Shown: positions 8,580 through 48,303 of the stretch, piece by piece
How the letters are laid out: each line of letters begins with the position of its first letter
How positions within the stretch are numbered: position 1 is the stretch's first letter
Virus record (IMG/VR): IMGVR_UViG_3300011113_000640
Span: 62,001 to 126,000 of that record
Strand: one strand, 5' to 3'
DNA: 64,000 nucleotides
Made by a program: the position numbers and the translations under genes
The notes under the pieces: generated by a model
Database searches by the model: none
What the model was told of the DNA's origin: nothing
Seen by the model: the letters and a program-made list of their open reading frames with translations, nothing else

Positions 8580-9698
8580 TTAAAGCATGCTGTTGTTATT
8601 ATGCCATTGGAAAAAGTCGGGCAAGACCTGTTTGTTATTTGTATTTTTAAATTTGCTGAGAAAATCAACGGCGCCTGGGTAAAAATCCTCAATCAAAGAT
8701 TTATTAAATTGGCCATCCAAAAATTGTGGCAACAAATCCTGCAGGTCGCAACGCAGTAAGATTTTGGCTATTTCTATATTTTTAAAAGGTGTCCAGGTTG
8801 TGGTATTGCCAAGATGCCAATGTTGATGATCATTGACCAAATGATTGATAATTTGCCGGTTCAGATCATGTATCGTGGGATATTGATGTCGCAGTTGATG
8901 TCTTGTGTTCCACGATTCAGTCCAGAGATCGTGATATTTGCTAAAATGATAGTAATGATATTTGTCTTTGTTTTGTTCCAACAACTGGCCAAAATTGATG
9001 TCATGCCAACTTGTCAACATGGCGATGACCGCAGGACCACGTAAAAAATATTCATCCCCGCAACTGCCGGTGGCCAACCATGTGGGTTGATTCCAATGAT
9101 GTATCTGCCCATAGGCCCAAAATGATTTGAGAGTTTTATTGTTATGACAAGTGAACATATCATAGTCATAGTATTCGTGAGTGATCAACTCAAAATCAAT
9201 CCGATCTCGCATCAGCATGGCATACAACAACAAGGTATCAACTCCACCCGAACAAAACAATTTTAAATTTTGAATCTGCAGGCTCGATAATCGATCCAAT
9301 GACTGAGACAAATGATCGCCAACTCGTTCCTGAGCTTGTTGCAAGGTCAAGGGTTGATCGGGCACGGAATAATCAATTGGACGTTTGGTGACCAGCACAT
9401 TGCCTTCAAAATCAATCAGCAAATCATCATCGGCCCAGGCCTGTGTGCTGGCCGCATCACAAGGTAGATTTGTTGATATTCCTGCGCCGTGCCACAGCGG
9501 AAAACTTCTCGGAGTGCTGTGGTTGATTTTCACGCCAATTTCAGTCATTTGCAACGCACAATGATTGTCGTAGTAGCCCTTGGTCCACTGGTCTAGCGTG
9601 GGTCGTTGCCAACCATGGTCACAGTTGATCCATAGATTTCCGCACTGCCAATGGTTGGGAAATCTACTATCTTGTTGTTTGGTTATGCTAAAAAACAT
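8580..9698 (-). CDS. Asparagine-synthase-like / N-type ATP pyrophosphatase
   Basis: FCSGGVDT PP-loop and ATGSCGDEYF (cf. TGxGGDELF); no N-terminal Cys glutaminase domain. Confidence 0.6.
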   Translation of the reverse strand: MFFSITKQQDSRFPNHWQCGNLWINCDHGWQRPTLDQWTKGYYDNHCALQMTEIGVKINHSTPRSFPLWHGAGISTNLPCDAASTQAWADDDLLIDFEGNVLVTKRPIDYSVPDQPLTLQQAQERVGDHLSQSLDRLSSLQIQNLKLFCSGGVDTLLLYAMLMRDRIDFELITHEYYDYDMFTCHNNKTLKSFWAYGQIHHWNQPTWLATGSCGDEYFLRGPAVIAMLTSWHDINFGQLLEQNKDKYHYYHFSKYHDLWTESWNTRHQLRHQYPTIHDLNRQIINHLVNDHQHWHLGNTTTWTPFKNIEIAKILLRCDLQDLLPQFLDGQFNKSLIEDFYPGAVDFLSKFKNTNNKQVLPDFFQWHNNNSML

Positions 9699-9761
9699 TT
9701 GGTTTTTGGAAAAATCTTATGTATACATTGATAAGTATAACATAGTAATTATGAAAACACA

Positions 9762-11333
9762 ATGAGAAATCTAATAAACTTAATAGAAGCGGTGTTATTG
9801 ACCGAAAAAAGTCGCGGTTTATTGTATCGCGAAAAAGGTGATGGTTTTTTTCAAGGCAACAAGGACAACCCCACAGCCGAAATAGTGTTTGATCGGGTGG
9901 ATTATTTTCCCAGTCAGCCCGGTGCTTATGCCAACTATGAAGAAATGGCCGAAGCTGGACAAGAACTGTTTCGACAGTATCCCAATATCATCTGGAGCAA
10001 CAAACCTACCAACGCCAGCAAGGCCTTTGCTATTATAACTTTTGACGGCCCGGCCAAAGGACAAAAAACCTACTACGGTCGATTCTTTGGCGAAATCAAA
10101 CAAGACATGGCCGGACTTTGGAAGAACAATGAACTACCCGGCGGCTGGCAACTCAACAAACAAGTTAGCCTGAAAGGCAGTTACTACAAATTAAAACCTG
10201 TGGACCTGTTTCCTGTCAACAGTACATTTGCCACTCCGGCCGATGCAGTATCGGCCATGGGCTCCAGACCTGGAACCACCCCCGACGAATTGGCCAACAT
10301 TGACAAAATACGTCCTGGTATGGATCAGTTGCTGGGTGGAAAATTGCCTACATTTGAGAACGTAGGCGAAATGTCCACCGCAGTGCGTGATGATCTTGGC
10401 GAAACCATTGGTCCTATAGCTCTTGTTCAAGGTATGATCACCTCGGGTGGAGCAGAAGCTGCAAGAAAAGATATCTTAGGGCCACAAGGTTCATTCTCTG
10501 GCAGTGCCATAAACTTTCCAGCGGCTAAGAACAATGGCCTGGTAGACAGCTATTTGTTACATCCGTCGGGTGTGGAAATTGGTATCAGCTCTAAAGGTGA
10601 AAAAGGTGCTTCTGCATCAGTCAAAAACATTGCCGACGGTATTGTGGCGGCCAGAGACAAAGGCATGGACAAGTTGTTGAAACAATACGCACCACAAGTT
10701 GACGTAATTGAAAAAGTAGGAACCTTAGGATCTGTGGATTTTCCTTTAGTGTTTGGTATCGAGCAAGGCATCATTGATGACACCACCGCACAAACAATCA
10801 AACAGTTGATCAAGAGTGGTGCGACCTCTACAGACGATCCAGAAGTGTTGGCGTTGATGAAAGACATCAAGGCCAAAACTGACAATCCCAGATACAATGT
10901 CGGCTATCATGCTCTGGCTTCGTTGGCACGACGAGTAGCTGTCAACATCAACTCGGATCCCAAGTTTGGTGAAGCCTGCTTGAAATTTTTGAATACCAGC
11001 CCTATCATACAACTACATTTAAATGGTTCAGACAAGGCCGGCACTTACACTGTCACAGGGTTTACATCAAAGTATCCGCCTGACTTCAAAGGCACGGTGG
11101 GTTTGGATGCTGGCAAAGTTTATGCAGCCACGGGCACAATTGGTCGTGTGAGTTTTAGTTACAACGGTGGCGGAGACAAAGACACTGATGTTGAAGTAGA
11201 CGTTGCTCCAGCAAAAACCGCCGCAACCGATTTAGATGTAGTCACACAAAAACGCAGTGCTATCACAGCCGCTCCTGACGAGCCCAAGAAATACGGCACA
11301 GAAAAAACCCTGGGCCGTAAAAGACAACGATAA
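9762..11333 (+). CDS. Hypothetical protein, probably virion-internal; possible PD-(D/E)xK-like nuclease fold
   Basis: 523 aa; MRNLINLIE...LLTE N-terminus; LVDSY...GISSK motif. Confidence 0.55.
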   Translation: MRNLINLIEAVLLTEKSRGLLYREKGDGFFQGNKDNPTAEIVFDRVDYFPSQPGAYANYEEMAEAGQELFRQYPNIIWSNKPTNASKAFAIITFDGPAKGQKTYYGRFFGEIKQDMAGLWKNNELPGGWQLNKQVSLKGSYYKLKPVDLFPVNSTFATPADAVSAMGSRPGTTPDELANIDKIRPGMDQLLGGKLPTFENVGEMSTAVRDDLGETIGPIALVQGMITSGGAEAARKDILGPQGSFSGSAINFPAAKNNGLVDSYLLHPSGVEIGISSKGEKGASASVKNIADGIVAARDKGMDKLLKQYAPQVDVIEKVGTLGSVDFPLVFGIEQGIIDDTTAQTIKQLIKSGATSTDDPEVLALMKDIKAKTDNPRYNVGYHALASLARRVAVNINSDPKFGEACLKFLNTSPIIQLHLNGSDKAGTYTVTGFTSKYPPDFKGTVGLDAGKVYAATGTIGRVSFSYNGGGDKDTDVEVDVAPAKTAATDLDVVTQKRSAITAAPDEPKKYGTEKTLGRKRQR

Positions 11334-12467: not shown

Positions 12468-13205
12468 ATGGCGTCTTACAACAACTACAGCGACAATTGG
12501 TATGTGACCGTAAATGGTGGAACTGGCACAGTTTATCTTGATGCCTCACTACAAGTAAATGGCAACATCACCTATGTCAGTCAGCTAGAGGTCAATGACG
12601 CTTTTATCATAGCAGCCGCCAACAACAGCAGCTCTGCCAATGTAACAGCCGTGGGCTTTTTGGCAGGCAAACCCACCACACCCATCAGCTATGCTGGAAT
12701 CCAATACAACGCCACAGCCGATGCCTGGCAAATATCCACCAATGTTTTTGCCAATGGCGTAGCCAACACAGCCTATGCCAATATCAGTACTTCAACATAC
12801 GGAAACACAAATGTTGTGGCCTTGTTATCGGCATTTGGTAGCAACACCATTTCAACTACCGGAACCATTAATTCCGGCAACATTGTAGCTCCCAATGTCA
12901 TTGTGGGCAACGTTACCACCAATCTAATAAGATCAGACGATTCTTCTTATCTAACTGTGCAAGATGGGTTGAATGTGGTTGGCGACGTTGAAGTATCGGG
13001 TAACATAACCGGTGGTAACACAATATCAGATTCAAGCATAACTCCTTCCAAAGCACTAGCCGACCTTACTGCTACAGATGGTGCACGGGCATTTGTAAAC
13101 GATGCTAACTTGGTGGCTGCAGGTAACTTTGGAAATCAGATCGGCAGTGGTGGATCAAATGTGGTGCCAGTCTGGTCGGATGGCTCCAACTGGTATATAG
13201 GCTAA
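12468..13205 (+). CDS. Structural protein sharing its C-terminal domain with the 2324 fibre
   Basis: Ends ...RAFVNDANLVAAGNFGNQIGSGGSNVVPVWSDGSNWYIG, nearly identical to the end of 2324..5587; TAAATA at 12446. Confidence 0.7.
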   Translation: MASYNNYSDNWYVTVNGGTGTVYLDASLQVNGNITYVSQLEVNDAFIIAAANNSSSANVTAVGFLAGKPTTPISYAGIQYNATADAWQISTNVFANGVANTAYANISTSTYGNTNVVALLSAFGSNTISTTGTINSGNIVAPNVIVGNVTTNLIRSDDSSYLTVQDGLNVVGDVEVSGNITGGNTISDSSITPSKALADLTATDGARAFVNDANLVAAGNFGNQIGSGGSNVVPVWSDGSNWYIG

Positions 13206-13918
13206 ACTGACTGTTCGCGTAGTGTGGCCAGTTTATAACGTTCCAGCAGTTTGATATAAGTCCAACCCAGGTCCCATTCCCATTTCTTCACGCTGAGTTT
13301 GGGACTAGCTGGATCTGCGTGATGATTGTTGTGCAATTCCTCGCCACCAATGAAAAATGCCCAAGGCACTATGTTGGTCGAATAGTCCTTGGTGGCTGTG
13401 TTTCTGTAGCCCCACCAGTGCCCCAGGCCGTTGATGACTCCGGCCGCAAACAAAGGTATCCAGATCATTTGCCAGCCCCAGGCCAACCATCCCCAGGCCC
13501 AGCCAAATATCATGCAATCAATAAAGAACATGATAACAATACCCAACCAGTTGAATCTTGTGTAGATGTTGCGTTCCATCCAGTCGTCAGGTGTGCCTAC
13601 TCCGTACTGTTCAACCATTTTTTTATCTTGTGCAGCCCAGGCATAGTAGAAAGCACCTCCCAGCAAGATCTGCCAGATTCCTTCATTTTGCGGGCTATGC
13701 GGATCACCTTCTTTGTCGGTAAATCTGTGATGTTTTCTATGAGTGGCCACCCACTGCCGAGTGACCATGCCTGTGGTCAGCCACAGCCAAAATCTCATGA
13801 AGTGTGCGACCCTGGGATCGAATGTGACTCCTCTATGTGCTTGACTGCGATGCAAATAAAGTGTGACACAGGCTATGGTGATGTGTGTCATCACCAGGAT
13901 GTAGATGAGTAGGCCCAT
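13202..13918 (-). CDS. Membrane fatty-acid (delta-9-type) desaturase
   Basis: His boxes HRSQAH, HRKHH, HNNHH; GDPHSP; GGEELHNNHH. Confidence 0.9.
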   Translation of the reverse strand: MGLLIYILVMTHITIACVTLYLHRSQAHRGVTFDPRVAHFMRFWLWLTTGMVTRQWVATHRKHHRFTDKEGDPHSPQNEGIWQILLGGAFYYAWAAQDKKMVEQYGVGTPDDWMERNIYTRFNWLGIVIMFFIDCMIFGWAWGWLAWGWQMIWIPLFAAGVINGLGHWWGYRNTATKDYSTNIVPWAFFIGGEELHNNHHADPASPKLSVKKWEWDLGWTYIKLLERYKLATLREQSV

Positions 13919-13925
13919 GTTTTAC

Positions 13926-14480
13926 TTAGCCAAAACTTTCCTGGAATGGCCGCCAGCTTTGTTGCAGAGCCATGTAAAACAAATTGCGTTGCCGTGTGAC
14001 CAGTTCTTGATTCAAGGTGATCCAGGTAGCAGGTGCCAGGGCAATCTTGGTTTCGCTGTCGCCACCTAGATCTCGTGGTTCCAGACCGTGTTTGTCACAC
14101 AGGTGCTTAATGGCTGCATTATGACCCAGGCAGTGCATGAACAGTTCGTTATAGCCACGATTTCTAGCCCAGACTATGCCTTGTGTGAGCAAGTCATCAC
14201 CGATGCCTAGGCCTCTATGATCGCGGTGCACTATGAGCCCAAATTCCACCTGCGCTTTGCTGATTTCGGCTATGTGCAAGGTGCCCAGCCAGCCCTCACA
14301 GTTGGCGGCTATCAGGAAAGCATGACCATTGGGCTCGGCTTCTATTCGTAGCATGAGGCTTTCTATGATGCCCACACCGGTGGTTCCAAAATACATGTGC
14401 TGGGTGTCGGCATCTTGCTCCTGCAACCATTCACCGTAGCGATGATATTTGTCAGGATCTAGAAATTGGGTGGTGTACAT
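13926..14480 (-). CDS. GNAT-family acetyltransferase
   Basis: VHRDHRGLGIG acetyl-CoA-binding motif A; WARNRG...HCLGHNAAI. Confidence 0.85.
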   Translation of the reverse strand: MYTTQFLDPDKYHRYGEWLQEQDADTQHMYFGTTGVGIIESLMLRIEAEPNGHAFLIAANCEGWLGTLHIAEISKAQVEFGLIVHRDHRGLGIGDDLLTQGIVWARNRGYNELFMHCLGHNAAIKHLCDKHGLEPRDLGGDSETKIALAPATWITLNQELVTRQRNLFYMALQQSWRPFQESFG

Positions 14481-15391: not shown

Positions 15392-16422
15392 TATACCAAC
15401 CCCAATTCTACTGCACGATTGTAAACCTGCGCACTGGCCAGGTTCTTACCTTTGCTTTCGCACTGTATGTCAAACTGGTTCCAGAAACCCAACACCCAAT
15501 CTGTGACAGCCGGGTTCCAGTAAAAGTCAGAATGTGCTCGTAGTTTTTGTTTTTTGTAGCCGGCTTCTAACAGACTTGCATGATCTGGACGATGCTGAAC
15601 TGCATGGTCCACAAGTACATCTTCACGGCTAACGCTGTAGTGCATAGCAGGACGAACACCGCGCCAGCTGTCCACGACACGTTTGACACGGTCGTCCGTG
15701 GGTGAAATATATTCTCCCGTTTTGATCCAGTGATGGTGAACATCAAGCACAGTAGGAACAATATCACCAAGTTCAAGACAACGATCCAGGCCATGTGTTA
15801 TTTCTTCGTTTTCAAATGTAATACAACTGCGGGCTGTGGGTGATAATCGCGACCAGGCACGGCGTGCACCGGCGGCACCGGCTTTACCTGATATGTGTAC
15901 GTTGATTTTAAAATCCTGGAAGGATTTGCCATAACCCATCCATCTGGCCATATCCGCATGATATTCAAACTCCTCTATGCTTCTATTTACGATTTCTTCG
16001 CTTTCCGACCCCAGCACACAGAACTGTCCAGGATGAAACGACAAACGAACATCCAGTCTGCGTGCGGTTTCACCAATGGGCGCAAAAATCCGTTCACAGT
16101 GATCTTGTATTTCCCTACGTTGCCACCAGGCCTTCCAGTCTTTCTCTGTGTAGCCTTGTAGCATTTCACTGCCCAGACGCACCATTCTACGATTTGGGAG
16201 CAATGAGGCCACACGCTCGATCAGTTTCACAGCGGCCGAGGCGTTGTGGTTCATGATGTCCCACTGGCGTTGTTCGGCTTCGGCTGGATGCTCACGCAAC
16301 CAACGCATGGTGGTTGATCGGCCGTTGAGGTCGCGGTCTTTGGCATTGACTTTCATGCCGCCGCATTCGGACGGATCATTGAGCCATTTGCAACAGAAAC
16401 CAATGCGTTTGAGTGTAGTCAT
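15391..16422 (-). CDS. uvsE: UV-damage endonuclease UvsE/UvdE
   Basis: RIGFCC, RLSFHPGQF, FENEE, LDVHHH, RAHSDF and CESKGKN motifs. Confidence 0.9.
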   Translation of the reverse strand: MTTLKRIGFCCKWLNDPSECGGMKVNAKDRDLNGRSTTMRWLREHPAEAEQRQWDIMNHNASAAVKLIERVASLLPNRRMVRLGSEMLQGYTEKDWKAWWQRREIQDHCERIFAPIGETARRLDVRLSFHPGQFCVLGSESEEIVNRSIEEFEYHADMARWMGYGKSFQDFKINVHISGKAGAAGARRAWSRLSPTARSCITFENEEITHGLDRCLELGDIVPTVLDVHHHWIKTGEYISPTDDRVKRVVDSWRGVRPAMHYSVSREDVLVDHAVQHRPDHASLLEAGYKKQKLRAHSDFYWNPAVTDWVLGFWNQFDIQCESKGKNLASAQVYNRAVELGLV

Positions 16423-16428
16423 GCATAC

Positions 16429-16457
16429 ATTATAGCACAAACTGTGCCAAATGTCAA
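16429..16457 (-). promoter_or_regulatory. Consensus sigma70 promoter for uvsE (probably leaderless mRNA)
   Basis: TTGACA-17 bp-TATAAT, 6 nt before the ATG at 16422. Confidence 0.8.
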
Positions 16458-16459
16458 GG

Positions 16460-17026
16460 TCAAATAGTGCCTAAAATAGAATCCAGGGTGTCAGTGACCA
16501 CATTTGGTAAGTTTGCTATGTTTTGGTCCAAAGCCGTGGCGTGATCCACTATAACCCATTGTGTTTGGTCATAGGTTAGAAAAGCCTGACGCACCATGTT
16601 GCGATGATGTCGTTCTCGATTGGCGGTCAATAGATCTGAGTCGGGTTTCAACTCCGCAAGATTCCAACCCAGCATCAACACTATGTCACTGGTGGTTGCA
16701 GCCAAGTGCATGGCCACCAATTCTTCTTGATGTATGACATCGTGAACAAACTCTCCGGCGTAAATTTTGACTCCTGTGGGTCTGTCCAGGTTGGCATACG
16801 CTGTGTCAGGCACATAAAAATTACAACTGCGTTGAAAATCTCGCTTGATAAATTCAGAGGCCTTGACCTGATCATGACAAATCACGTTGTCGGTTTGGCA
16901 GGCTCGCCAGGTACGCCATGATCCCCAAAATGCACCAATGGTCTTCAACACTGCAATGTCTTGGGTAGGATCCAGTTGCACACTGTCACTGAGCACCCAA
17001 CTGATCTTTTCTCTGGCTCTATGCAT
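16460..17026 (-). CDS. Hypothetical protein, weak Maf/MptE-like glycosyltransferase resemblance
   Basis: DNVICHD and AMHLA...DIVLMLGWNL pattern. Confidence 0.5.
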   Translation of the reverse strand: MHRAREKISWVLSDSVQLDPTQDIAVLKTIGAFWGSWRTWRACQTDNVICHDQVKASEFIKRDFQRSCNFYVPDTAYANLDRPTGVKIYAGEFVHDVIHQEELVAMHLAATTSDIVLMLGWNLAELKPDSDLLTANRERHHRNMVRQAFLTYDQTQWVIVDHATALDQNIANLPNVVTDTLDSILGTI

Positions 17027-17942
17027 GAGATCGTTGTGTGTCCAAGGTCACACAGTGGAATCCGCCGCCCAGGGTTCGGCTGTGTCTAAGACGCAAAGGA
17101 ATGGTATCAAAACCATGTGATTGTAACACTGGTATTAACGCAGTTTGATCAGCATCAACTATGACAGTTTCTGGATCCAGGACCAGCATGTTCATGGCTA
17201 TCCATTTACTAGCATAAGGATACTGATAAAAATTTTGTGGTACTATCATGTCATCAGTTACCCAGATCTTTTCCCAGTAGTCAAAAGCTCGAGGACAGTT
17301 GTCGGGAGTGACGCGACCAGCGTTTAACATGACCAGACCTTCACGCAAGGGCACTATGGTTGAATCTATATGCACTCCAGCATAAAAATTACACAATTCT
17401 ATGTTTACCGCAGGAAATCGATCACACAACCATTCATAGGCCGCACGATTTCCTGAAGCTGATTCCAGGAACAACCAGGTATCGCCTAACCTGCACACAT
17501 TAGCAGCGTCCATGACCATGCCTGAATCTCTGGGCATGGTCAAGACGTTTCTTGCTTGGGCTACAAGCCTTGTATAGTTTTTTATCTCTTGATTGCGACA
17601 TGGATACATCATGTTGACATCAACCATGGTGTCTTCGTACACCAAGAGTCGATCTCTAGGACAATAGTTGTACATGCCCTGGGTGGCTACAAAATCCATG
17701 TCTTGGGGGCGGTACACCGTGGCACCGTACCGCAACAAGGTCTCACACAATAGATCGAGATCTTCATTGGCTTCGTCGACAATCCATTGCGGCACTGGGC
17801 CCGCGGGCACCGGTGTTTCTGTCCAGGTAGTTTTTTCAGATTCCAGGGCAAACACAGGATCCGATGTAGGCCAATTGGCATGAGTGGCTGTGCCTACCAC
17901 TATGGCCTTGAGAGGATCCCACTCGTTGATTGAATTAATCAT
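17019..17942 (-). CDS. Amidinotransferase (glycine / inosamine-phosphate amidinotransferase family)
   Basis: NEWDPLKAIVVG, CPRD, DAAN, HIDS and GGGFHCVTLD catalytic Cys motif. Confidence 0.9.
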   Translation of the reverse strand: MINSINEWDPLKAIVVGTATHANWPTSDPVFALESEKTTWTETPVPAGPVPQWIVDEANEDLDLLCETLLRYGATVYRPQDMDFVATQGMYNYCPRDRLLVYEDTMVDVNMMYPCRNQEIKNYTRLVAQARNVLTMPRDSGMVMDAANVCRLGDTWLFLESASGNRAAYEWLCDRFPAVNIELCNFYAGVHIDSTIVPLREGLVMLNAGRVTPDNCPRAFDYWEKIWVTDDMIVPQNFYQYPYASKWIAMNMLVLDPETVIVDADQTALIPVLQSHGFDTIPLRLRHSRTLGGGFHCVTLDTQRSHA

Positions 17943-18456
17943 CTACATGTCCGGTGATTTGCAAGGTGTATCGAGGAGTCAGTCCCAGATTGGCAGCCAT
18001 GTGTGGAGTATCATAGGTCCATTCAATCACAGCACCTGCACGCCAATTTACAAAGGCCTGGTCCATGTACTCAGCGTAGTGTCCAGGTTGCCAGTCTTCT
18101 AAAAAGATAATTGCGCGACGTATGGTGTGTTCCCGGCCTTGTAGTTTGAAAACATCTATGTATTTCAAGTAAAGATCGCCGTGTGTGGGCAACACTGTGC
18201 CTGTGTCCATTCTGTAATAACTGGTGCCCACATCACGCCATCCCTGGCCTTGGAATATTTCCACAATCCTTTGATTCCAACTAGGTTGTTGACTTCTCAT
18301 GTCGCACATGTTACCAGTGAACTTGTTGGGATATCCTTGTGAGGTCCAAACTTCTAATAGTTGTGTGTCATTGAAAGATTCATTGATGTAGTCAAGTGTT
18401 TTGTAGTCTTCATTCCAAAAAGGATAAAGTTGATATTTGTGAATGCTGTGAGTCAT
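17935..18456 (-). CDS. 2OG-Fe(II) oxygenase / cupin (aspartyl beta-hydroxylase-like)
   Basis: LPTHGD (HxD), PHMAAN, RYTLQITG. Confidence 0.75.
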   Translation of the reverse strand: MTHSIHKYQLYPFWNEDYKTLDYINESFNDTQLLEVWTSQGYPNKFTGNMCDMRSQQPSWNQRIVEIFQGQGWRDVGTSYYRMDTGTVLPTHGDLYLKYIDVFKLQGREHTIRRAIIFLEDWQPGHYAEYMDQAFVNWRAGAVIEWTYDTPHMAANLGLTPRYTLQITGHVDD

Positions 18457-18497
18457 AATTCTAAGTCCTGATCAAATTAACTGCGTAAATAGTCCAC

Positions 18498-19781
18498 ATG
18501 AACATTCCTATAGACCGCTTGTATCATTACATTGAGAGCTGTGCCAAAAAAATCTACGGTGATCATGTTTTAATTTATCGTTTTTGGCCGCATGGTTCAA
18601 AAAACATTGAGAATCTGACTTCATTACACCCTCTAAAGTCTTGGCTGGAACTGCAGACCTTGCCTGTAATATATTGCAATGATCAAGAACCTCTACAATA
18701 TGACTACTACAAAAACAATTTAAAACAATTCGACGGGAAATTTGCAGATCTGTTGGTAAAATTAAATTTGGATTACAAAGTAACAAATCTAAATTCTTAT
18801 CAAAATATATTTGCCAAAAACATACTGTTGCACAGTGAAAAAAATTCAACTGATTTAGAAAAATATCAAAAACATGACCAATTAATTTTGGTCTATTACT
18901 GGAGTCATGCTGTCATAGCCCGAGACTGGTATAGATTTGCAGAGCATGTAGATTTTCAAAAAAGTCCTAAAAGATTTTTTTTGATTTACAATCGCTCTTG
19001 GACCGGTACTAGAGAATACCGGCTTAAATTTTCTGATTTGTTGATTGATGCCGAGCTAGTCAAGCATTGTCAAAGCACATTTAATCCTCAAGATTCTGAA
19101 ACAGATGTACGTTATACAAACTATGCGTTTCAAACAAAAAAATGGCAACCAACACACAAATTAGAAAAATATTTTGCTCCAAACAGTGCACCTGCTAGTA
19201 GCAGTGCGGATTTTGAGATTCTTGATTACTGTGACACAGAAGTTGAAGTTGTGCTTGAAACTTTGTTTGACGACAATCGTTGGCATTTGACTGAAAAAAT
19301 TCTTAGACCCATTGCATGCGGTCAACCGTTTATCTTGGCCAGCACGCCGGGCAGTCTAGAATATTTAAAACAATATGGTTTTCAAACCTACCAAGAGGTC
19401 TGGAACGAAGACTATGACACCGTTACTGACCCAGAATCAAGATTACATAAAATCATTGACTTGATGAAATATCTGGTTGGTCTCAACGACAGACAAAAAA
19501 AAGATATCATGCATCGAGCGCAGAAGATAGCCGATCACAATCGAAAGTTATTTTTCAGTAAAGAATTTTTTGATAGAATAACAAATGAGTTAGAAACAAA
19601 TTTGGTGGCGGCTTTTGCCTGCCTAAAAGTGTTGCCGGCAAATCAAAATTTCATAGATAGATACACTAAGATACTAGCAAATCCTATCACAAAAAATTTT
19701 TTAAGTCTCGATCAAGATATTCTGTCCCCTAATTTGCACATGGTTGACCAAGCATTAAAGTTAGCTCAAAGCAGACCATAA
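18498..19781 (+). CDS. Glycosyltransferase-like protein (TEK family paralogue 1)
   Basis: VVLET...LTEKILRPIACGQPFI...LKQYGFQT...EDYD; AT-rich. Confidence 0.55.
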   Translation: MNIPIDRLYHYIESCAKKIYGDHVLIYRFWPHGSKNIENLTSLHPLKSWLELQTLPVIYCNDQEPLQYDYYKNNLKQFDGKFADLLVKLNLDYKVTNLNSYQNIFAKNILLHSEKNSTDLEKYQKHDQLILVYYWSHAVIARDWYRFAEHVDFQKSPKRFFLIYNRSWTGTREYRLKFSDLLIDAELVKHCQSTFNPQDSETDVRYTNYAFQTKKWQPTHKLEKYFAPNSAPASSSADFEILDYCDTEVEVVLETLFDDNRWHLTEKILRPIACGQPFILASTPGSLEYLKQYGFQTYQEVWNEDYDTVTDPESRLHKIIDLMKYLVGLNDRQKKDIMHRAQKIADHNRKLFFSKEFFDRITNELETNLVAAFACLKVLPANQNFIDRYTKILANPITKNFLSLDQDILSPNLHMVDQALKLAQSRP

Positions 19782-46282: not shown

Positions 46283-46699
46283 CTACTTTATGTGGTGTTG
46301 CTGGTATTGCCGTTTGATCGTTACTGCTTGGATGGTATTTAATATTGAATTAGTTTCCCAATTCAGTATATATTTTGATTGTTCCACCAGGACTAAATTA
46401 TGCCCAGTTTCAGTCAAAACCAGGCGTGCCGGCTGTAAATCTGGTCGTTCCAGCAAAGTTATAGTATACAGGATTCCTAAGCCTCTTGCAAGTTCACAGT
46501 AGATGTCATCACTCAAAAGTTGCCAAGGATCGGGCCAGGTTTTTTGGTCATCCCAGTGTAGATAGTAAGGTCGCCAAGGTGCTCGAAACCACCAAGCATT
46601 AATGTGTTCTAGTGCAGATTGAGCAGAGAGATTTTGGCAATGGACACGCAACTGATTCCAGCTTTCCAGCCGAGCGGCAAATGTAACAGGCCAGATCAA
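46283..46699 (-). CDS. Hypothetical protein (possible transglutaminase-like fold)
   Basis: WPDPWQLL...YCE; 138 aa, TTG start. Confidence 0.55.
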   Translation of the reverse strand: MIWPVTFAARLESWNQLRVHCQNLSAQSALEHINAWWFRAPWRPYYLHWDDQKTWPDPWQLLSDDIYCELARGLGILYTITLLERPDLQPARLVLTETGHNLVLVEQSKYILNWETNSILNTIQAVTIKRQYQQHHIK

Positions 46700-48303
46700 G
46701 CTAGATAAGTGACAGAGTAGTAAATGGTGCCATTGATGCCAGTGTCTGTGGTAGTGTAATCCAAAGATACATCAGACCCTGTTTGACTGACAGACAGTGT
46801 GGCGCCGGTACTGCCATTCTCTACATAGTCATCGTTGAAGGTTAGAACTGTTCCTGCACCCCCATCTGAAGCAATCAAGATAAAACCTGTGCGATAAAAA
46901 TTATCGCGTATGATGGTGTAATCAATTTTGAAACATTTATTAAACTCGGTGCTGAGCGTAACAACCGTGCCTGTGGAATCGTTGATCAAAGTTGCTTGGG
47001 AGCCGCTGAGTCTGGTATACTGTCCCATCTGCAGGCTTTCGCCATTGGTAGTGGCGATACTGAGAGTGGTAGTACCATTGCCGGGATTGGTCAAACTAAT
47101 ACGCGGATAAATTTCAGCCGAGGTGTCATTGCGTTCAAACATGTCACCTATGCTGACATTGTTGTTGCTTTCAATACTGATGTTGGAAGCAATTACTGTG
47201 TTGTTTGACCCAGTAAATTCATTTCCAACGTCATAGAATACATTGTTGGCACTGGCATTCAAAGCTGTGTTTAAATATTGTCCAAATATGATACCTTCGG
47301 CATAGATATTATCAAATACATTGCCTGTGATCCTGGAACCAGTTGGACCGCCATCAACTGTTGAGCCTGTGCCCAGCAAGATACCTTGATACAAAACATT
47401 TAAATAACTGTTGGTCACAGTCAATCCCTTGGTAGGATAGTCTGTGTACACAGCATTGACCAACCCAGAGAATGTGCAAGTGTCGAACACAATCTGTTGG
47501 CATATGAAACTGGCATCGCTGAGCAGGCTGACACCAATGCTGCCATTGGTGTCTGTTGTGAGATCTGTTGTGGTGCTGGCGCCTGTGATGCCTACGTTTT
47601 TGAATGACATGTTGATGGCGTCTTGTACTAAAAACACGCTGCCAGTGGGATCCAGATGTGTGAATCCCATGTTGGAGATGGTAATGTTCTGTGGGCCGGT
47701 GGCTCCTGCGTTGCCAATGTTGTTGCCAGTTTGTTGCAAGCTGTCAGCTGTGCGTGCCACATAATCCGCCACACCGTCGTCCATGGCGATTACGCTGTTG
47801 TCGCCACCTTCACCAAACAGTGTGGCATACGGCGGAATATTGATACTCGAGGTAATACGATACACGCCAGCTGGAAAATACAAGCTACGACGTATTTGTG
47901 GGTTGACTTCTCGGCAAAACAGCTGATACAGGGCGCGATTAATGGCCGCGGTGTCGTCAGTTGACCCATCGCCTACTGCTCCAAAATCCGTGACCGATGC
48001 ATACTGATCCAACCAACTCTGTAAACTCTGTGTCACAGGTGTGCCCAGAGTAGGTCCGGTCTGCACTGTGTAGCCTGCTGCTTGACCTTTATAGGTATAG
48101 GTGTTGGTAAAAGCCAGGATGTCGCTGAATTCTGTCAGTATTTCTGTGTTGCCTATGACCGGAGCACCATCTTGTATGGTGCCGTTGCCGATGAATAATC
48201 TGCGCGAATCAGTGCTCCACCCTAATTCAGCTCCAGCTAATTGAGGAAGATTTTCTTGTAATCCTTTGCGATTGGTAATCTGCGAAATCTGTACTATGGC
48301 CAC
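46696..48303 (-). CDS. Tailspike-like protein: Mtd-N-type head plus pectate-lyase-like beta-helix
   Basis: LPQLAGAELGWSTDSRRLFIGNG; SVTDFGAVGDGSTDDTAAI...YFPAGVY. Confidence 0.8.
   Translation of the reverse strand: MAIVQISQITNRKGLQENLPQLAGAELGWSTDSRRLFIGNGTIQDGAPVIGNTEILTEFSDILAFTNTYTYKGQAAGYTVQTGPTLGTPVTQSLQSWLDQYASVTDFGAVGDGSTDDTAAINRALYQLFCREVNPQIRRSLYFPAGVYRITSSINIPPYATLFGEGGDNSVIAMDDGVADYVARTADSLQQTGNNIGNAGATGPQNITISNMGFTHLDPTGSVFLVQDAINMSFKNVGITGASTTTDLTTDTNGSIGVSLLSDASFICQQIVFDTCTFSGLVNAVYTDYPTKGLTVTNSYLNVLYQGILLGTGSTVDGGPTGSRITGNVFDNIYAEGIIFGQYLNTALNASANNVFYDVGNEFTGSNNTVIASNISIESNNNVSIGDMFERNDTSAEIYPRISLTNPGNGTTTLSIATTNGESLQMGQYTRLSGSQATLINDSTGTVVTLSTEFNKCFKIDYTIIRDNFYRTGFILIASDGGAGTVLTFNDDYVENGSTGATLSVSQTGSDVSLDYTTTDTGINGTIYYSVTYLA

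What the first reader, a model, noticed from the sequence alone, without database searches (positions are those of the whole stretch)
16460..19781. Amidinotransferase, 2OG-Fe oxygenase, Maf-like and glycosyltransferase-like cluster: candidate novel modification pathway
Seen: overlapping genes oxygenase > amidinotransferase > Maf/MptE-like ORF, divergent from a TEK-family GT-like gene. The amidinotransferase keeps the Asp/His/Cys catalytic motifs. Known: this family transfers the amidino group of arginine to amines (glycine, or aminocyclitols in streptomycin biosynthesis) and is not a standard phage gene. Inference: the phage makes a guanidinylated/hydroxylated sugar or amino-acid unit to decorate virion proteins, the host surface or DNA.
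Basis: partly seen in the sequence, partly recalled or inferred. Interest (0 to 1): 0.72.

Follow-up and report, generated by a model that had tools for sequence, protein, structure and literature searches.

The report
Phage arginine-amidino sugar-tailoring gene cassette
An uncultured 320-kb jumbo phage carries a conserved gene cassette (small Fe/2-oxoglutarate oxygenase, streptomycin-type amidinotransferase, Maf/MptE-fold protein, GT-B glycosyltransferase) that most likely builds and transfers a guanidino-bearing sugar-like unit whose product and target are unknown.

Summary

- **307 aa:** a StrB1-type amidinotransferase (PDB 1bwd, E 2.7e-60) with an invariant Asp97/His191/Cys297.
- **173 aa:** a minimal cupin with an invariant HxD...H...RxT motif, as in 2OG/Fe(II) oxygenases.
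- **188 aa:** folds like Maf/sialyltransferase/MptE (DUF115).
- **427 aa:** a GT-B glycosyltransferase with an invariant T-E-K.

The genes co-occur. In 78 of 78 IMG/VR loci fetched with the oxygenase alone, the amidinotransferase follows directly, and the GT-B is almost always divergent upstream.

Relatives show the fuller operon: GT1-like, epimerase/dehydratase, nucleotide-sugar dehydrogenase, oxygenase, small DegT-like protein, GTP cyclohydrolase I, amidinotransferase. In this genome those partners are scattered at 284 kb and 300-306 kb.

The best reading is a streptidine-like "oxidise, transaminate, amidinate" route on a sugar-type acceptor, followed by glycosyl transfer. The product and target are unknown. 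The usual routes to DNA glycosylation, 7-deazaguanine DNA and nonulosonate glycosylation lack their key genes here. The conserved GTP cyclohydrolase I partner is unexplained.

No cultured phage carries the GT-B or the 188-aa gene. I rate this a new variant of a known kind, of moderate to high interest.

The parts
17935..18456 (-). 173-aa small cupin-type Fe(II)/2-oxoglutarate oxygenase-like protein; first gene of the minus-strand trio
   Evidence: His92, Asp94 and His152 are invariant, and Arg162 is nearly invariant (Lys in one of 15 diverse homologues), followed by x-Thr164. There are weak, repeated hits to PF05118 Asp_Arg_Hydrox in four homologues (E 3e-4 to 0.1) and in Atlas neighbours. The profile's best PDB hit is the 2OG enzyme AtsK over the distal His/Arg region, E 0.093. 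It is 28% identical to S-SCSM2R ORF308, annotated as a 2OG-Fe(II) oxygenase. The fold was not modelled.
17019..17942 (-). 307-aa StrB1-type L-arginine amidinotransferase; start overlaps the oxygenase stop by 8 nt
   Evidence: phmmer against PDB: 1bwd StrB1 E 2.7e-60, HsvA 1.2e-27, AGAT 7e-27, SxtG 1.3e-21, and no deiminase or DDAH. Asp97, His191 and Cys297, plus the DAAN and HIDST blocks, are invariant in 9 phage homologues. It lies directly downstream of the oxygenase in 78 of 78 loci seeded with the oxygenase.
16460..17026 (-). 188-aa protein with DUF115 / MptE / Maf / sialyltransferase-like fold; last gene of the trio; start overlaps the amidinotransferase stop by 8 nt
   Evidence: AF2 model with pLDDT 96. 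In an unbiased VIA search the best hit is Maf glycosyltransferase 5mu5 (Z 10.0, 170 of 188 residues), then SteA 8.7, the Campylobacter sialyltransferase 2p56 8.7 and MptE HPPK 8sd5 7.9. AFDB clusters named DUF115 or MptE-like give TM 0.43-0.63 by query. There is no Pfam hit. It is present after the amidinotransferase in about half of the relatives.
18498..19781 (+). 427-aa GT-B-fold glycosyltransferase-like protein, divergent from the trio; low GC (35% against 46%)
   Evidence: AF2 model with pLDDT 92. Foldseek matches GT-B enzymes at probability 1.0 (SdgB, WaaG, MshA, PimB). VIA gives T4 BGT Z 12.3, POGLUT1 11.0, H. pylori alpha1,3-FucT 10.2 and T4 AGT 9.9. Thr265, Glu266 and Lys267 are invariant. 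The same fold is fused to an epimerase/dehydratase, a methyltransferase or a UDPG/GDP-Man dehydrogenase in other phages. It is divergent upstream of the oxygenase in nearly all relatives.
18430..18459 (+). promoter-like site (TTGATA-18-CATAAT) inside the 5' end of the oxygenase gene, 39 nt before the GT-B start codon
   Evidence: Consensus scan, 10 of 12 matches. The number of such sites in the region is no higher than in shuffles, so this is only a candidate.
16429..16457 (-). perfect sigma-70 consensus promoter (TTGACA-17-TGnTATAAT) just after the 188-aa stop; marks the 3' boundary of the trio and the start of a separate uvdE unit
   Evidence: 12 of 12 matches with an extended -10. The ATG at 16421 lies 7 nt after the -10 element, so uvdE probably starts at 16421 (343 aa, as in relatives), not at the TTG at 16440.

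Best explanation
The four genes are the locally retained part of a larger, conserved phage pathway. This pathway tailors a sugar-type (nucleotide- or phosphate-activated amino-sugar or aminocyclitol-like) unit and transfers it to an acceptor.

Proposed steps:
1. A nucleotide-sugar dehydrogenase and/or epimerase-dehydratase oxidises the precursor.
2. A DegT/StrS-type PLP enzyme installs an amine.
3. The StrB1-type enzyme forms a Cys297-amidino intermediate from L-arginine and passes the amidino group to that amine. This makes a guanidino group and releases ornithine. It is the same oxidise, transaminate, amidinate logic that builds streptidine.
4. The small Fe(II)/2OG oxygenase, translationally coupled to the amidinotransferase, hydroxylates the same substrate or its precursor.
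5. The fast-evolving GT-B enzyme attaches the finished cationic unit to its target. The Maf/sialyltransferase-fold 188-aa protein may act as a second transferase or as a (pyro)phosphokinase that activates the unit.

Shown here: the gene identities, the catalytic residues, conserved linkage across two phage clades plus one distant cyanophage, and the sugar-enzyme partners.

Inferred: the order of steps, the sugar nature of the acceptor, and the guanidino product.

Unknown: the target. My leaning is a virion or cell-envelope glycan rather than DNA.
For: **Enzyme identities**
- Amidinotransferase identity and catalytic triad.
- Oxygenase triad.
- GT-B fold.
- DUF115/Maf fold.

**Linkage**
- The oxygenase is followed directly by the amidinotransferase in 78 of 78 loci seeded with the oxygenase. 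The GT-B lies divergent upstream in nearly all. A nucleotide-sugar dehydrogenase sits between them in about 50.
- A second phage clade (L015, L033, L187-L197) keeps the order GT1-like, epimerase/dehydratase, dehydrogenase, oxygenase, small DegT-like, GTP cyclohydrolase I, amidinotransferase.
- The window genome holds the same partners elsewhere: the dehydrogenase at 284 kb, and GT1-like, epimerase, radical SAM, small DegT-like and GTP cyclohydrolase I at 300-306 kb.
- The distant cyanophage S-SCSM2R (28-33% identity) keeps the oxygenase-amidinotransferase pair, with overlapping ORFs, inside a block of five glycosyltransferases, a small DegT/AHBA-synthase-like gene and a radical SAM gene.

**Further support**
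- A paralogous module in the same genome places an amidinotransferase-like gene, a GT-B paralog and a DegT gene side by side at 253.9-258.9 kb.
- The GT-B fold occurs fused to an epimerase/dehydratase, a methyltransferase or a nucleotide-sugar dehydrogenase in other phages.
- The protein scores about twice as high against StrB1 (aminocyclitol-phosphate acceptor) as against glycine or polyamine amidinotransferases (207 bits against about 100).
Against: - No acceptor, product or target has been observed. Everything about the chemistry is inference from family membership and neighbourhood.
- All close relatives are one lineage (60% identity or more), so much of the synteny could be inherited rather than selected. 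Independent support rests on the second clade, on S-SCSM2R and on the paralogous module.
- In this genome the sugar-enzyme partners lie more than 200 kb away.
- GTP cyclohydrolase I, conserved between the small DegT-like gene and the amidinotransferase in the second clade, has no role in the proposed scheme. The neighbouring PnrA-like or YhhQ/Vut_1 genes point towards guanine-derived chemistry.
- The small DegT-like protein is only about 200 aa, roughly half of a normal DegT enzyme.
- The oxygenase fold was not modelled, and its Pfam hits are sub-threshold.
- The 188-aa fold is equally compatible with a kinase.
- The nearest cellular amidinotransferases (36-40% identity) work in a non-sugar context: an SbnA/SbnB-like plus NRPS-like operon.
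Confidence: 0.5

Rival explanations
1. The pathway works on a GTP-derived heterocycle (a pterin or 7-deazapurine-type compound, possibly glycosylated) rather than on a plain sugar. GTP cyclohydrolase I and PTPS would make the scaffold. The 188-aa MptE-fold protein would act as a pterin-type pyrophosphokinase. The amidinotransferase and oxygenase would tailor the scaffold, and the GT-B would glycosylate it, as pteridine glycosyltransferases do.
For: GTP cyclohydrolase I sits immediately before the amidinotransferase in about 11 second-clade loci, with near-abutting ORFs. It is followed by a PnrA-like purine-nucleoside-binding protein or a Vut_1/YhhQ-family transporter. In the window genome, small DegT-like and GTP cyclohydrolase I genes are adjacent inside the sugar island, and a PTPS/QueD-family gene lies at 296.5 kb. 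The 188-aa model matches archaeal MptE HPPK at Z 7.9 and thiamine pyrophosphokinases at Z 6-6.5.
Against: - No known pterin or deazapurine route uses a pentein-family amidinotransferase.
- The best fold match of the 188-aa protein is a glycosyltransferase (Maf, Z 10), not a kinase.
- There is no TGT/DpdA, and no QueC apart from a clear NadE.
- In the window's own clade, GTP cyclohydrolase I is not in the cassette.
- The 188-aa gene is absent from the second clade, where GTP cyclohydrolase I is present.
Confidence: 0.15
2. The cassette hypermodifies phage DNA. The GT-B enzyme would be a DNA glycosyltransferase like T4 BGT/AGT and would put a cationic guanidino-sugar on a base, protecting the DNA from restriction.
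For: The best VIA matches of the GT-B model are T4 beta-glucosyltransferase (Z 12.3, 12.0), with T4 alpha-glucosyltransferase at 9.9. The cassette lies among replication and repair genes: uvdE is next door in nearly all relatives, and DNA ligase, RNR and DnaB lie in the window. The GT-B evolves fast (47-52% identity where the amidinotransferase is 75-80%), as expected in an arms race.
Against: - There is no ThyA-family dCMP/dUMP hydroxymethylase to provide the usual 5-hydroxymethyl handle. Only ThyX is present.
- There is no TGT/DpdA.
- The Z scores for protein and lipid glycosyltransferases are nearly as high (POGLUT1 11.0, FucT 10.2).
- The genome carries at least three GT-B paralogs and dozens of sugar genes, which looks more like glycan assembly than a one-step DNA decoration.
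Confidence: 0.1
3. The amidinotransferase is a stand-alone auxiliary metabolic gene acting on a free small amine (glycine to guanidinoacetate, or a polyamine as with HsvA), or is effectively an arginine-consuming enzyme. The neighbouring genes would be functionally unrelated.
For: Phage amidinotransferases are usually annotated as glycine amidinotransferase (CP220/CPt10; S-SCSM2R ORF266). Ocean viral AMG surveys discuss the creatine pathway. HsvA and AGAT are significant PDB hits.
Against: - The StrB1 score is about twice that of AGAT or HsvA.
- The gene is translationally coupled to the oxygenase and the 188-aa gene.
- Linkage to the oxygenase is 78 of 78 and persists at 28-33% identity in S-SCSM2R.
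- Sugar enzymes are consistently in the operon.
Confidence: 0.08
4. The genes make a diffusible aminoglycoside-like or other guanidino secondary metabolite (an antibiotic), as the authors of S-SCSM2R suggested for their homologues.
For: The closest characterised enzyme is from streptomycin biosynthesis. DegT/StrS-type, dehydrogenase and glycosyltransferase partners resemble aminoglycoside clusters. The S-SCSM2R paper calls ORF305, ORF306 and ORF309 antibiotic-synthesis genes.
Against: I did not look for exporter or self-resistance genes, or for inositol-phosphate synthase or inosamine kinase genes. None appeared among the neighbours that were scanned. A lytic jumbo phage has only a short window for a multi-step diffusible product. 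The idea is annotation-based only.
Confidence: 0.07

Closest known systems
StrB1, L-arginine:inosamine-phosphate amidinotransferase of Streptomyces griseus (PDB 1bwd), and the streptidine 'dehydrogenase, StrS/StsC aminotransferase, amidinotransferase' logic
   Same: The best sequence match over the whole protein (E 2.7e-60). The Asp/His/Cys triad and the DAAN and HIDST blocks are conserved. Operon partners of the dehydrogenase and DegT/StrS families occur in relatives.
   Different: The phage protein is about 40 aa shorter and is encoded by a phage. It is coupled to a 173-aa 2OG oxygenase and to GT-B and DUF115-fold proteins. No inositol-phosphate or kinase genes were seen. The acceptor is unknown.
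Synechococcus phage S-SCSM2R ORF308-ORF309 (2OG-Fe(II) oxygenase + 'inosamine amidinotransferase')
   Same: The same overlapping oxygenase-amidinotransferase pair (28% and 33% identity), set within a glycosyltransferase-rich block with a small DegT/AHBA-synthase-like gene and a radical SAM gene. Both of those have homologues in the window genome.
   Different: There is no homologue of the 427-aa GT-B or the 188-aa protein. The function there is also only annotated, and was interpreted as antibiotic synthesis.
Campylobacter phages CP220/CPt10: putative glycine amidinotransferase in a radical-SAM cluster
   Same: A phage-borne pentein-family amidinotransferase (23-25% identity) next to several radical SAM genes. 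The window genome's two amidinotransferase-like paralogs likewise sit next to radical SAM genes.
   Different: The relationship is very distant, there is no oxygenase or GT-B partner, and the function is unknown.
Maf flagellin glycosyltransferases / GT42 sialyltransferases / archaeal MptE (DUF115, PF01973)
   Same: The predicted fold of the 188-aa protein.
   Different: There is no sequence-level match to PF01973. The protein is only 188 aa, a single domain. The genome has no NeuB or CMP-sugar synthetase.
GT-B glycosyltransferases: T4 BGT, POGLUT1 (GT90), H. pylori alpha1,3-fucosyltransferase (GT10), GT4 enzymes (MshA, WaaG)
   Same: A two-Rossmann-domain GT-B fold over about 370 residues. An invariant T-E-K in the C-terminal domain recalls the GT10 donor-binding motif. 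That comparison is from memory and was not tested by alignment.
   Different: There is no detectable sequence similarity to any Pfam or PDB family, even with a 40-sequence profile. The family is known only from viruses.

Membership tests
Amidinotransferase family (pentein superfamily; AGAT/StrB1/SxtG/HsvA) | Significant full-length sequence similarity to characterised amidinotransferases rather than to deiminases or DDAH | tested here: met
   StrB1 E 2.7e-60, HsvA 1.2e-27, AGAT 7e-27, SxtG 1.3e-21, with no hydrolase among the hits. DDAH at only 15.9 bits, against a cut-off of 300.
Amidinotransferase family (pentein superfamily; AGAT/StrB1/SxtG/HsvA) | Catalytic Cys-His-Asp triad | tested here: met
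   Asp97, His191 and Cys297 are invariant in 9 homologues and are kept in the genome's two paralogs. They lie in the blocks aligned to StrB1.
Amidinotransferase family (pentein superfamily; AGAT/StrB1/SxtG/HsvA) | Pfam PF02274 above its gathering score | tested here: not met
   No Pfam family at E <= 0.01. The model is known to be weak for this branch: the CP220 record reports PF02274 at only 0.0045.
Amidinotransferase family (pentein superfamily; AGAT/StrB1/SxtG/HsvA) | Transfer of the arginine amidino group to an amine acceptor | not testable with these tools
   Needs an enzyme assay.
Fe(II)/2-oxoglutarate oxygenases (cupin/DSBH) | HxD/E...H facial triad plus a basic residue (RxS/T) about 10 residues after the distal His | tested here: met
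   His92, Asp94 and His152 are invariant. Arg162 is nearly invariant (Lys in one of 15 sequences), followed by x-Thr164.
Fe(II)/2-oxoglutarate oxygenases (cupin/DSBH) | Curated family hit, or the DSBH fold | tested here: inconclusive
   PF05118 is hit only below threshold, and only in homologues (E 3e-4 to 0.1). The best PDB hit of the profile is AtsK at E 0.093.
GT-B glycosyltransferases | Two Rossmann-like domains with the GT-B topology | tested here: met
   Model pLDDT 92. Foldseek probability 1.0 to many GT-B enzymes. VIA Z 9-12 over about 250-290 residues.
GT-B glycosyltransferases | Membership of a described sequence family (CAZy/Pfam) | tested here: not met
   No Pfam, NCBIfam or PHROG hit. 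No PDB hit with the sequence or with a 40-sequence profile.
T4-type DNA glucosyltransferase system | Phage-made 5-hydroxymethylpyrimidine (ThyA-family hydroxymethylase) as the acceptor | tested here: not met
   PF00303 is absent from the 320-kb record. ThyX is present.
DUF115 / MptE-like / Maf (PF01973) | Sialyltransferase-like/MptE-like alpha/beta fold | tested here: met
   Maf 5mu5 Z 10.0, 2p56 8.7, 8sd5 7.9. DUF115 clusters in AFDB.
DUF115 / MptE-like / Maf (PF01973) | Sequence match to PF01973 | tested here: not met
   No hit in the protein. The only genome match is elsewhere, at E 0.012.
Maf-type nonulosonic-acid glycosylation | NeuB-type synthase and CMP-sugar synthetase to supply the donor | tested here: not met
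   PF03102 and PF02348 are absent from the genome. The host could still supply them.
7-deazaguanine DNA modification (Dpd/Que) | DpdA/TGT transglycosylase plus FolE, QueD, QueE and QueC | tested here: not met
   FolE and a PTPS/QueD-family gene are present. There is no TGT. The only QueC-like match is a clear NadE.

The most novel reading that the evidence does not exclude
An abundant, uncultured lineage of aquatic jumbo phages uses arginine as an amidino donor to make a previously undescribed cationic guanidino-glycan. The scaffold could partly derive from GTP via GTP cyclohydrolase I. Virus-only GT-B and Maf-fold transferases would install the glycan on virion proteins or on DNA. That would be a new class of viral macromolecule decoration built on streptidine-like chemistry.
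Probability: 0.2. Interest if true: 0.85.

Novelty: new variant of a known kind. Interest (0 to 1): 0.62.

Why it matters
Phage glycosyltransferases and sugar-nucleotide genes are known. Phage amidinotransferases have been annotated, but none has an assigned function in the papers found here. This work defines a testable unit: an oxygenase-amidinotransferase pair, invariably linked, with sugar-pathway partners and two virus-only transferase families. It is present in hundreds of viral contigs (433 and 575 matches in IMG/VR) and thousands of metagenomic protein clusters.

If the product is a guanidino sugar on virions or DNA, it would add a new, positively charged modification to phage biology. 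Such a modification would bear on adsorption, restriction evasion and virion stability. It would also provide new enzymes for making guanidinylated sugars. In addition, the work gives a first functional context for two large families of 'hypothetical' viral proteins.

Tried and rejected
- **Family scans.** Pfam, NCBIfam and PHROGs scans of the four proteins gave nothing usable except an unannotated PHROG for the amidinotransferase.
- **PDB searches.** Sequence and profile searches for the 173-, 188- and 427-aa proteins and for the relatives' 348-aa protein were empty or insignificant. Foldseek against PDB for the 188-aa model gave only generic alpha/beta hits; the Maf/MptE match came only from the unbiased aligner.
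- **Cultured phages.** megablast of the region found nothing. tblastn of the GT-B and the 188-aa protein found no homologue in 50,697 GenBank phage records.
- **Nonulosonic-acid (Maf) route.** Rejected because there is no NeuB or CMP-transferase.
- **7-deazaguanine DNA route.** Rejected because there is no TGT or QueC.
- **hmC/hmU glycosylation.** Rejected because there is no ThyA-family enzyme.
- **Cellular homologues.** These sit in a different operon (SbnA/SbnB-like plus NRPS-like) without the oxygenase, so they do not inform the phage acceptor.
- **RNA evidence.** No RNA run holds this DNA. Contigs of relatives from four metatranscriptomes lie on uvdE and on parts of the amidinotransferase and oxygenase genes at 80-95% likeness. 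This does not show transcription.
- **ORF calling.** My first greedy ORF caller wrongly dropped the oxygenase in some relatives. I corrected this with tblastn.
- **Not run.** No complex prediction was run, because I make no binding claim.

Full report
**Setting.** The window is bases 62,001-126,000 of a 320,541-bp IMG/VR virus record, estimated about 93% complete. It has no close relative among 50,697 GenBank phage records. The surrounding genes are typical of a large lytic phage:
- UvdE, a GNAT and a fatty-acid desaturase just downstream
- ClpX-like protein, DNA ligase and a pectate-lyase-like protein
- class Ia RNR

**Observation.**
- On the minus strand, the 173-aa, 307-aa and 188-aa genes overlap by 8 nt at each junction.
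- The 427-aa gene is divergent, 41 nt away.
- Directly after the 188-aa stop there is a perfect TTGACA-17-TATAAT promoter, followed 7 nt later by an ATG that opens uvdE. The trio is therefore a unit of its own.
- None of the four proteins reaches a curated Pfam, NCBIfam or annotated PHROG threshold.

**What each protein is.**

*The 307-aa protein is an amidinotransferase.*
- Its PDB matches are StrB1 (E 2.7e-60, 207 bits), HsvA, AGAT and SxtG, with no deiminase or DDAH.
- Asp97, His191 and Cys297 are invariant in nine phage homologues down to 35% identity.

*The 173-aa protein is a small 2OG/Fe oxygenase-like cupin.*
- His92, Asp94 and His152 are invariant. Arg162 is nearly invariant (Lys in one of 15 sequences), followed by x-Thr164. 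This is the facial triad and 2-oxoglutarate-binding motif.
- Homologues repeatedly give sub-threshold hits to PF05118 (Atlas neighbours).
- Its S-SCSM2R homologue is annotated as a 2OG-Fe(II) oxygenase.

*The 427-aa protein has a GT-B fold.*
- The model is confident (pLDDT 92).
- It is a GT-B fold by Foldseek (probability 1.0 to SdgB, WaaG, MshA, PimB) and by VIA (T4 BGT 12.3, POGLUT1 11.0, H. pylori FucT 10.2, T4 AGT 9.9).
- It has no sequence relative in PDB, even with a profile, and its family is virus-only.

*The 188-aa protein has a Maf/MptE-like fold.*
- The model is confident (pLDDT 96).
- In an unbiased search its best matches are the Maf flagellin glycosyltransferase (Z 10.0 over 170 residues), SteA, a Campylobacter sialyltransferase and archaeal MptE.
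- AFDB clusters named DUF115 or MptE-like also match.

**Co-occurrence.** I sampled relatives independently with the oxygenase as the only query. That gave 433 matches in IMG/VR, of which 80 loci were kept: 78 new ones plus L006 and L007 from the earlier scan.
- tblastn shows the amidinotransferase directly downstream in all 78 new loci.
- The GT-B lies divergent upstream in nearly all.
- A UDP-glucose/GDP-mannose-dehydrogenase-family gene sits between the GT-B and the oxygenase in about 50.
- An unknown 348-426-aa protein plus the 188-aa gene follow the amidinotransferase in about 45.
- uvdE comes next.

These loci are one lineage (60% identity or more), so three more distant comparisons matter.
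1. A second clade (L015, L033, L187-L197; amidinotransferase 42-44% identical) keeps the order GT1-like, epimerase/dehydratase, dehydrogenase, oxygenase, small DegT-like, GTP cyclohydrolase I, amidinotransferase. A PnrA-like nucleoside-binding protein or a Vut_1/YhhQ transporter follows.
2. Cyanophage S-SCSM2R (28% and 33% identity) keeps the overlapping oxygenase-amidinotransferase pair inside a block of five glycosyltransferases, a small DegT/AHBA-synthase-like gene and a radical SAM gene. Both of the latter have homologues in the window genome.
3. The window genome has a paralogous module in which an amidinotransferase-like gene with an intact triad abuts a GT-B paralog, with a DegT gene beside them.

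The partners missing from the window cassette exist elsewhere in the same genome. The dehydrogenase is at 284 kb. The GT1-like, epimerase, radical SAM/SPASM, small DegT-like and GTP cyclohydrolase I genes are at 300-306 kb. In addition, the GT-B fold occurs fused to an epimerase/dehydratase, a methyltransferase or a nucleotide-sugar dehydrogenase in other phages.

**Mechanism.** The recurring set of dehydrogenase/dehydratase, DegT/StrS-type PLP enzyme and StrB1-type amidinotransferase is the logic by which streptidine is built. That comparison is established knowledge of the streptomycin pathway and was not tested here.

I therefore propose that an activated sugar-type precursor is oxidised, then transaminated, then guanidinylated from arginine through a Cys297-amidino intermediate. 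The coupled oxygenase would hydroxylate it, and the GT-B would transfer it. The 188-aa protein would act as a second transferase or an activating kinase.

The gene identities and the linkage are shown. The chemistry is inferred. The target is unknown.

**Why not DNA, Maf-type or deazaguanine systems.**
- There is no ThyA-type hydroxymethylase, only ThyX.
- There is no TGT/DpdA, and the only QueC-like match is NadE.
- There is no NeuB or CMP-sugar synthetase.
- The T4 BGT match is only marginally above the matches to protein and lipid glycosyltransferases.

**What does not fit.** GTP cyclohydrolase I is an integral operon member in the second clade and sits in the window genome's sugar island, alongside a PTPS/QueD-family gene. 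Purine-nucleoside-binding and YhhQ-type genes follow the amidinotransferase there. This suggests guanine-derived chemistry that my scheme does not explain. I keep it as the main rival, at 0.15.

**Other context.**
- The nearest cellular amidinotransferases (36-40% identity; Luminiphilus, Halieaceae, Hyphomicrobiaceae and others) sit with SbnA/SbnB-like and NRPS-like genes and lack the oxygenase. The phage clade therefore has its own context.
- The GT-B gene is compositionally odd (35% GC against 46%). It also diverges much faster than its neighbours (about 50% identity against about 77% in the same contigs), as expected for a specificity-determining or arms-race protein.
- The papers found by my searches only annotate phage amidinotransferases without assigning a function.

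**Verdict.** This is a real, conserved and abundant cassette. The target remains open, and the GTP cyclohydrolase link was missed. I rate it a new variant of a known kind, with interest 0.62.

Noticed in passing
window 16421-16457 (-): A perfect sigma-70 promoter (TTGACA, 17 nt, TG-n-TATAAT) lies 7 nt before an ATG. uvdE therefore probably starts at 16421 (343 aa), not at the TTG at 16440, and its mRNA would be leaderless or nearly so.
   Followed up: partly
window 18498-19781 (+): The GT-B gene has 35% GC (GC3 33%) against 46% for the window. It is only 47-52% identical in relatives whose flanking genes are 75-80% identical. It is either fast-evolving or recently replaced.
   Followed up: partly
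G000 169384-170553 and 253909-254928 (loci L018, L019): There are two further amidinotransferase-superfamily paralogs (389 and 339 aa, phrog_25854). They keep the Asp/His/Cys triad but have large insertions and an altered DAAN block. Each lies next to a radical SAM gene, one of them B12-binding. Campylobacter phages CP220/CPt10 show the same pairing.
   Followed up: partly
G000 277-306 kb (loci L020, L021): A large sugar/cofactor island holds a nucleotide-sugar dehydrogenase, NadE, three epimerase/dehydratases, two full DegT aminotransferases plus one 208-aa DegT-like fragment, radical SAM/SPASM, a GT1-like gene, methyltransferases, an amidohydrolase, GTP cyclohydrolase I and PTPS.
   Followed up: partly
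L015 5287-7671; L033 4647-9396; L187-L197: In a second phage clade, GTP cyclohydrolase I lies directly before the amidinotransferase. A PnrA-like purine-nucleoside-binding protein (or a Vut_1/YhhQ-family transporter in L015) follows. L033 adds a 2-hydroxyacid dehydrogenase and a second 2OG oxygenase. This is unexplained.
   Followed up: partly
L006 5354-6400, L009 6917-8197, L031 3309-4379, L011 7694-8959: A conserved 348-426-aa protein sits between the amidinotransferase and the 188-aa gene in about half of the relatives. It is absent from the window genome and has no Pfam, NCBIfam, PHROG or PDB match.
   Followed up: partly
L035-L107 (bacterial genomes and MAGs): Cellular homologues of the amidinotransferase (36-40% identity; many Luminiphilus/Halieaceae, Hyphomicrobiaceae, Planctomycetes) sit in a conserved operon. 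The operon has a PALP (SbnA-like) enzyme, an ornithine-cyclodeaminase-like (SbnB-like) enzyme and a protein of about 1,400 aa with AMP-binding, PP-binding and hexapeptide domains. This looks like an uncharacterised guanidino-amino-acid natural-product pathway.
   Followed up: partly
L028-L032: Contigs filed under MAGs of Legionella, Haliscomenobacter, Terrimicrobiaceae and Bacteroidetes carry the phage cassette (59-75% identity, with uvdE and the GT-B). They are probably phage contigs binned with bacteria and give no reliable host clue.
   Followed up: no
window 13202-14480 (-): A fatty-acid desaturase (238 aa) and a GNAT acetyltransferase (184 aa) lie downstream of uvdE. Both are conserved in the same position in relatives (L008, L009).
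   Followed up: no
window 46696-48303 (-): A 535-aa protein with a pectate-lyase-like beta-helix and an Mtd_N domain (tailspike/depolymerase-like) lies next to the ribonucleotide reductase gene, within the replication-gene region.
   Followed up: no
G000 9442-10116 and 204099-205256: There is a 224-aa paralog of the oxygenase that keeps the His/Asp/His triad, and a third GT-B paralog (385 aa). Their neighbourhoods were not annotated.
   Followed up: no
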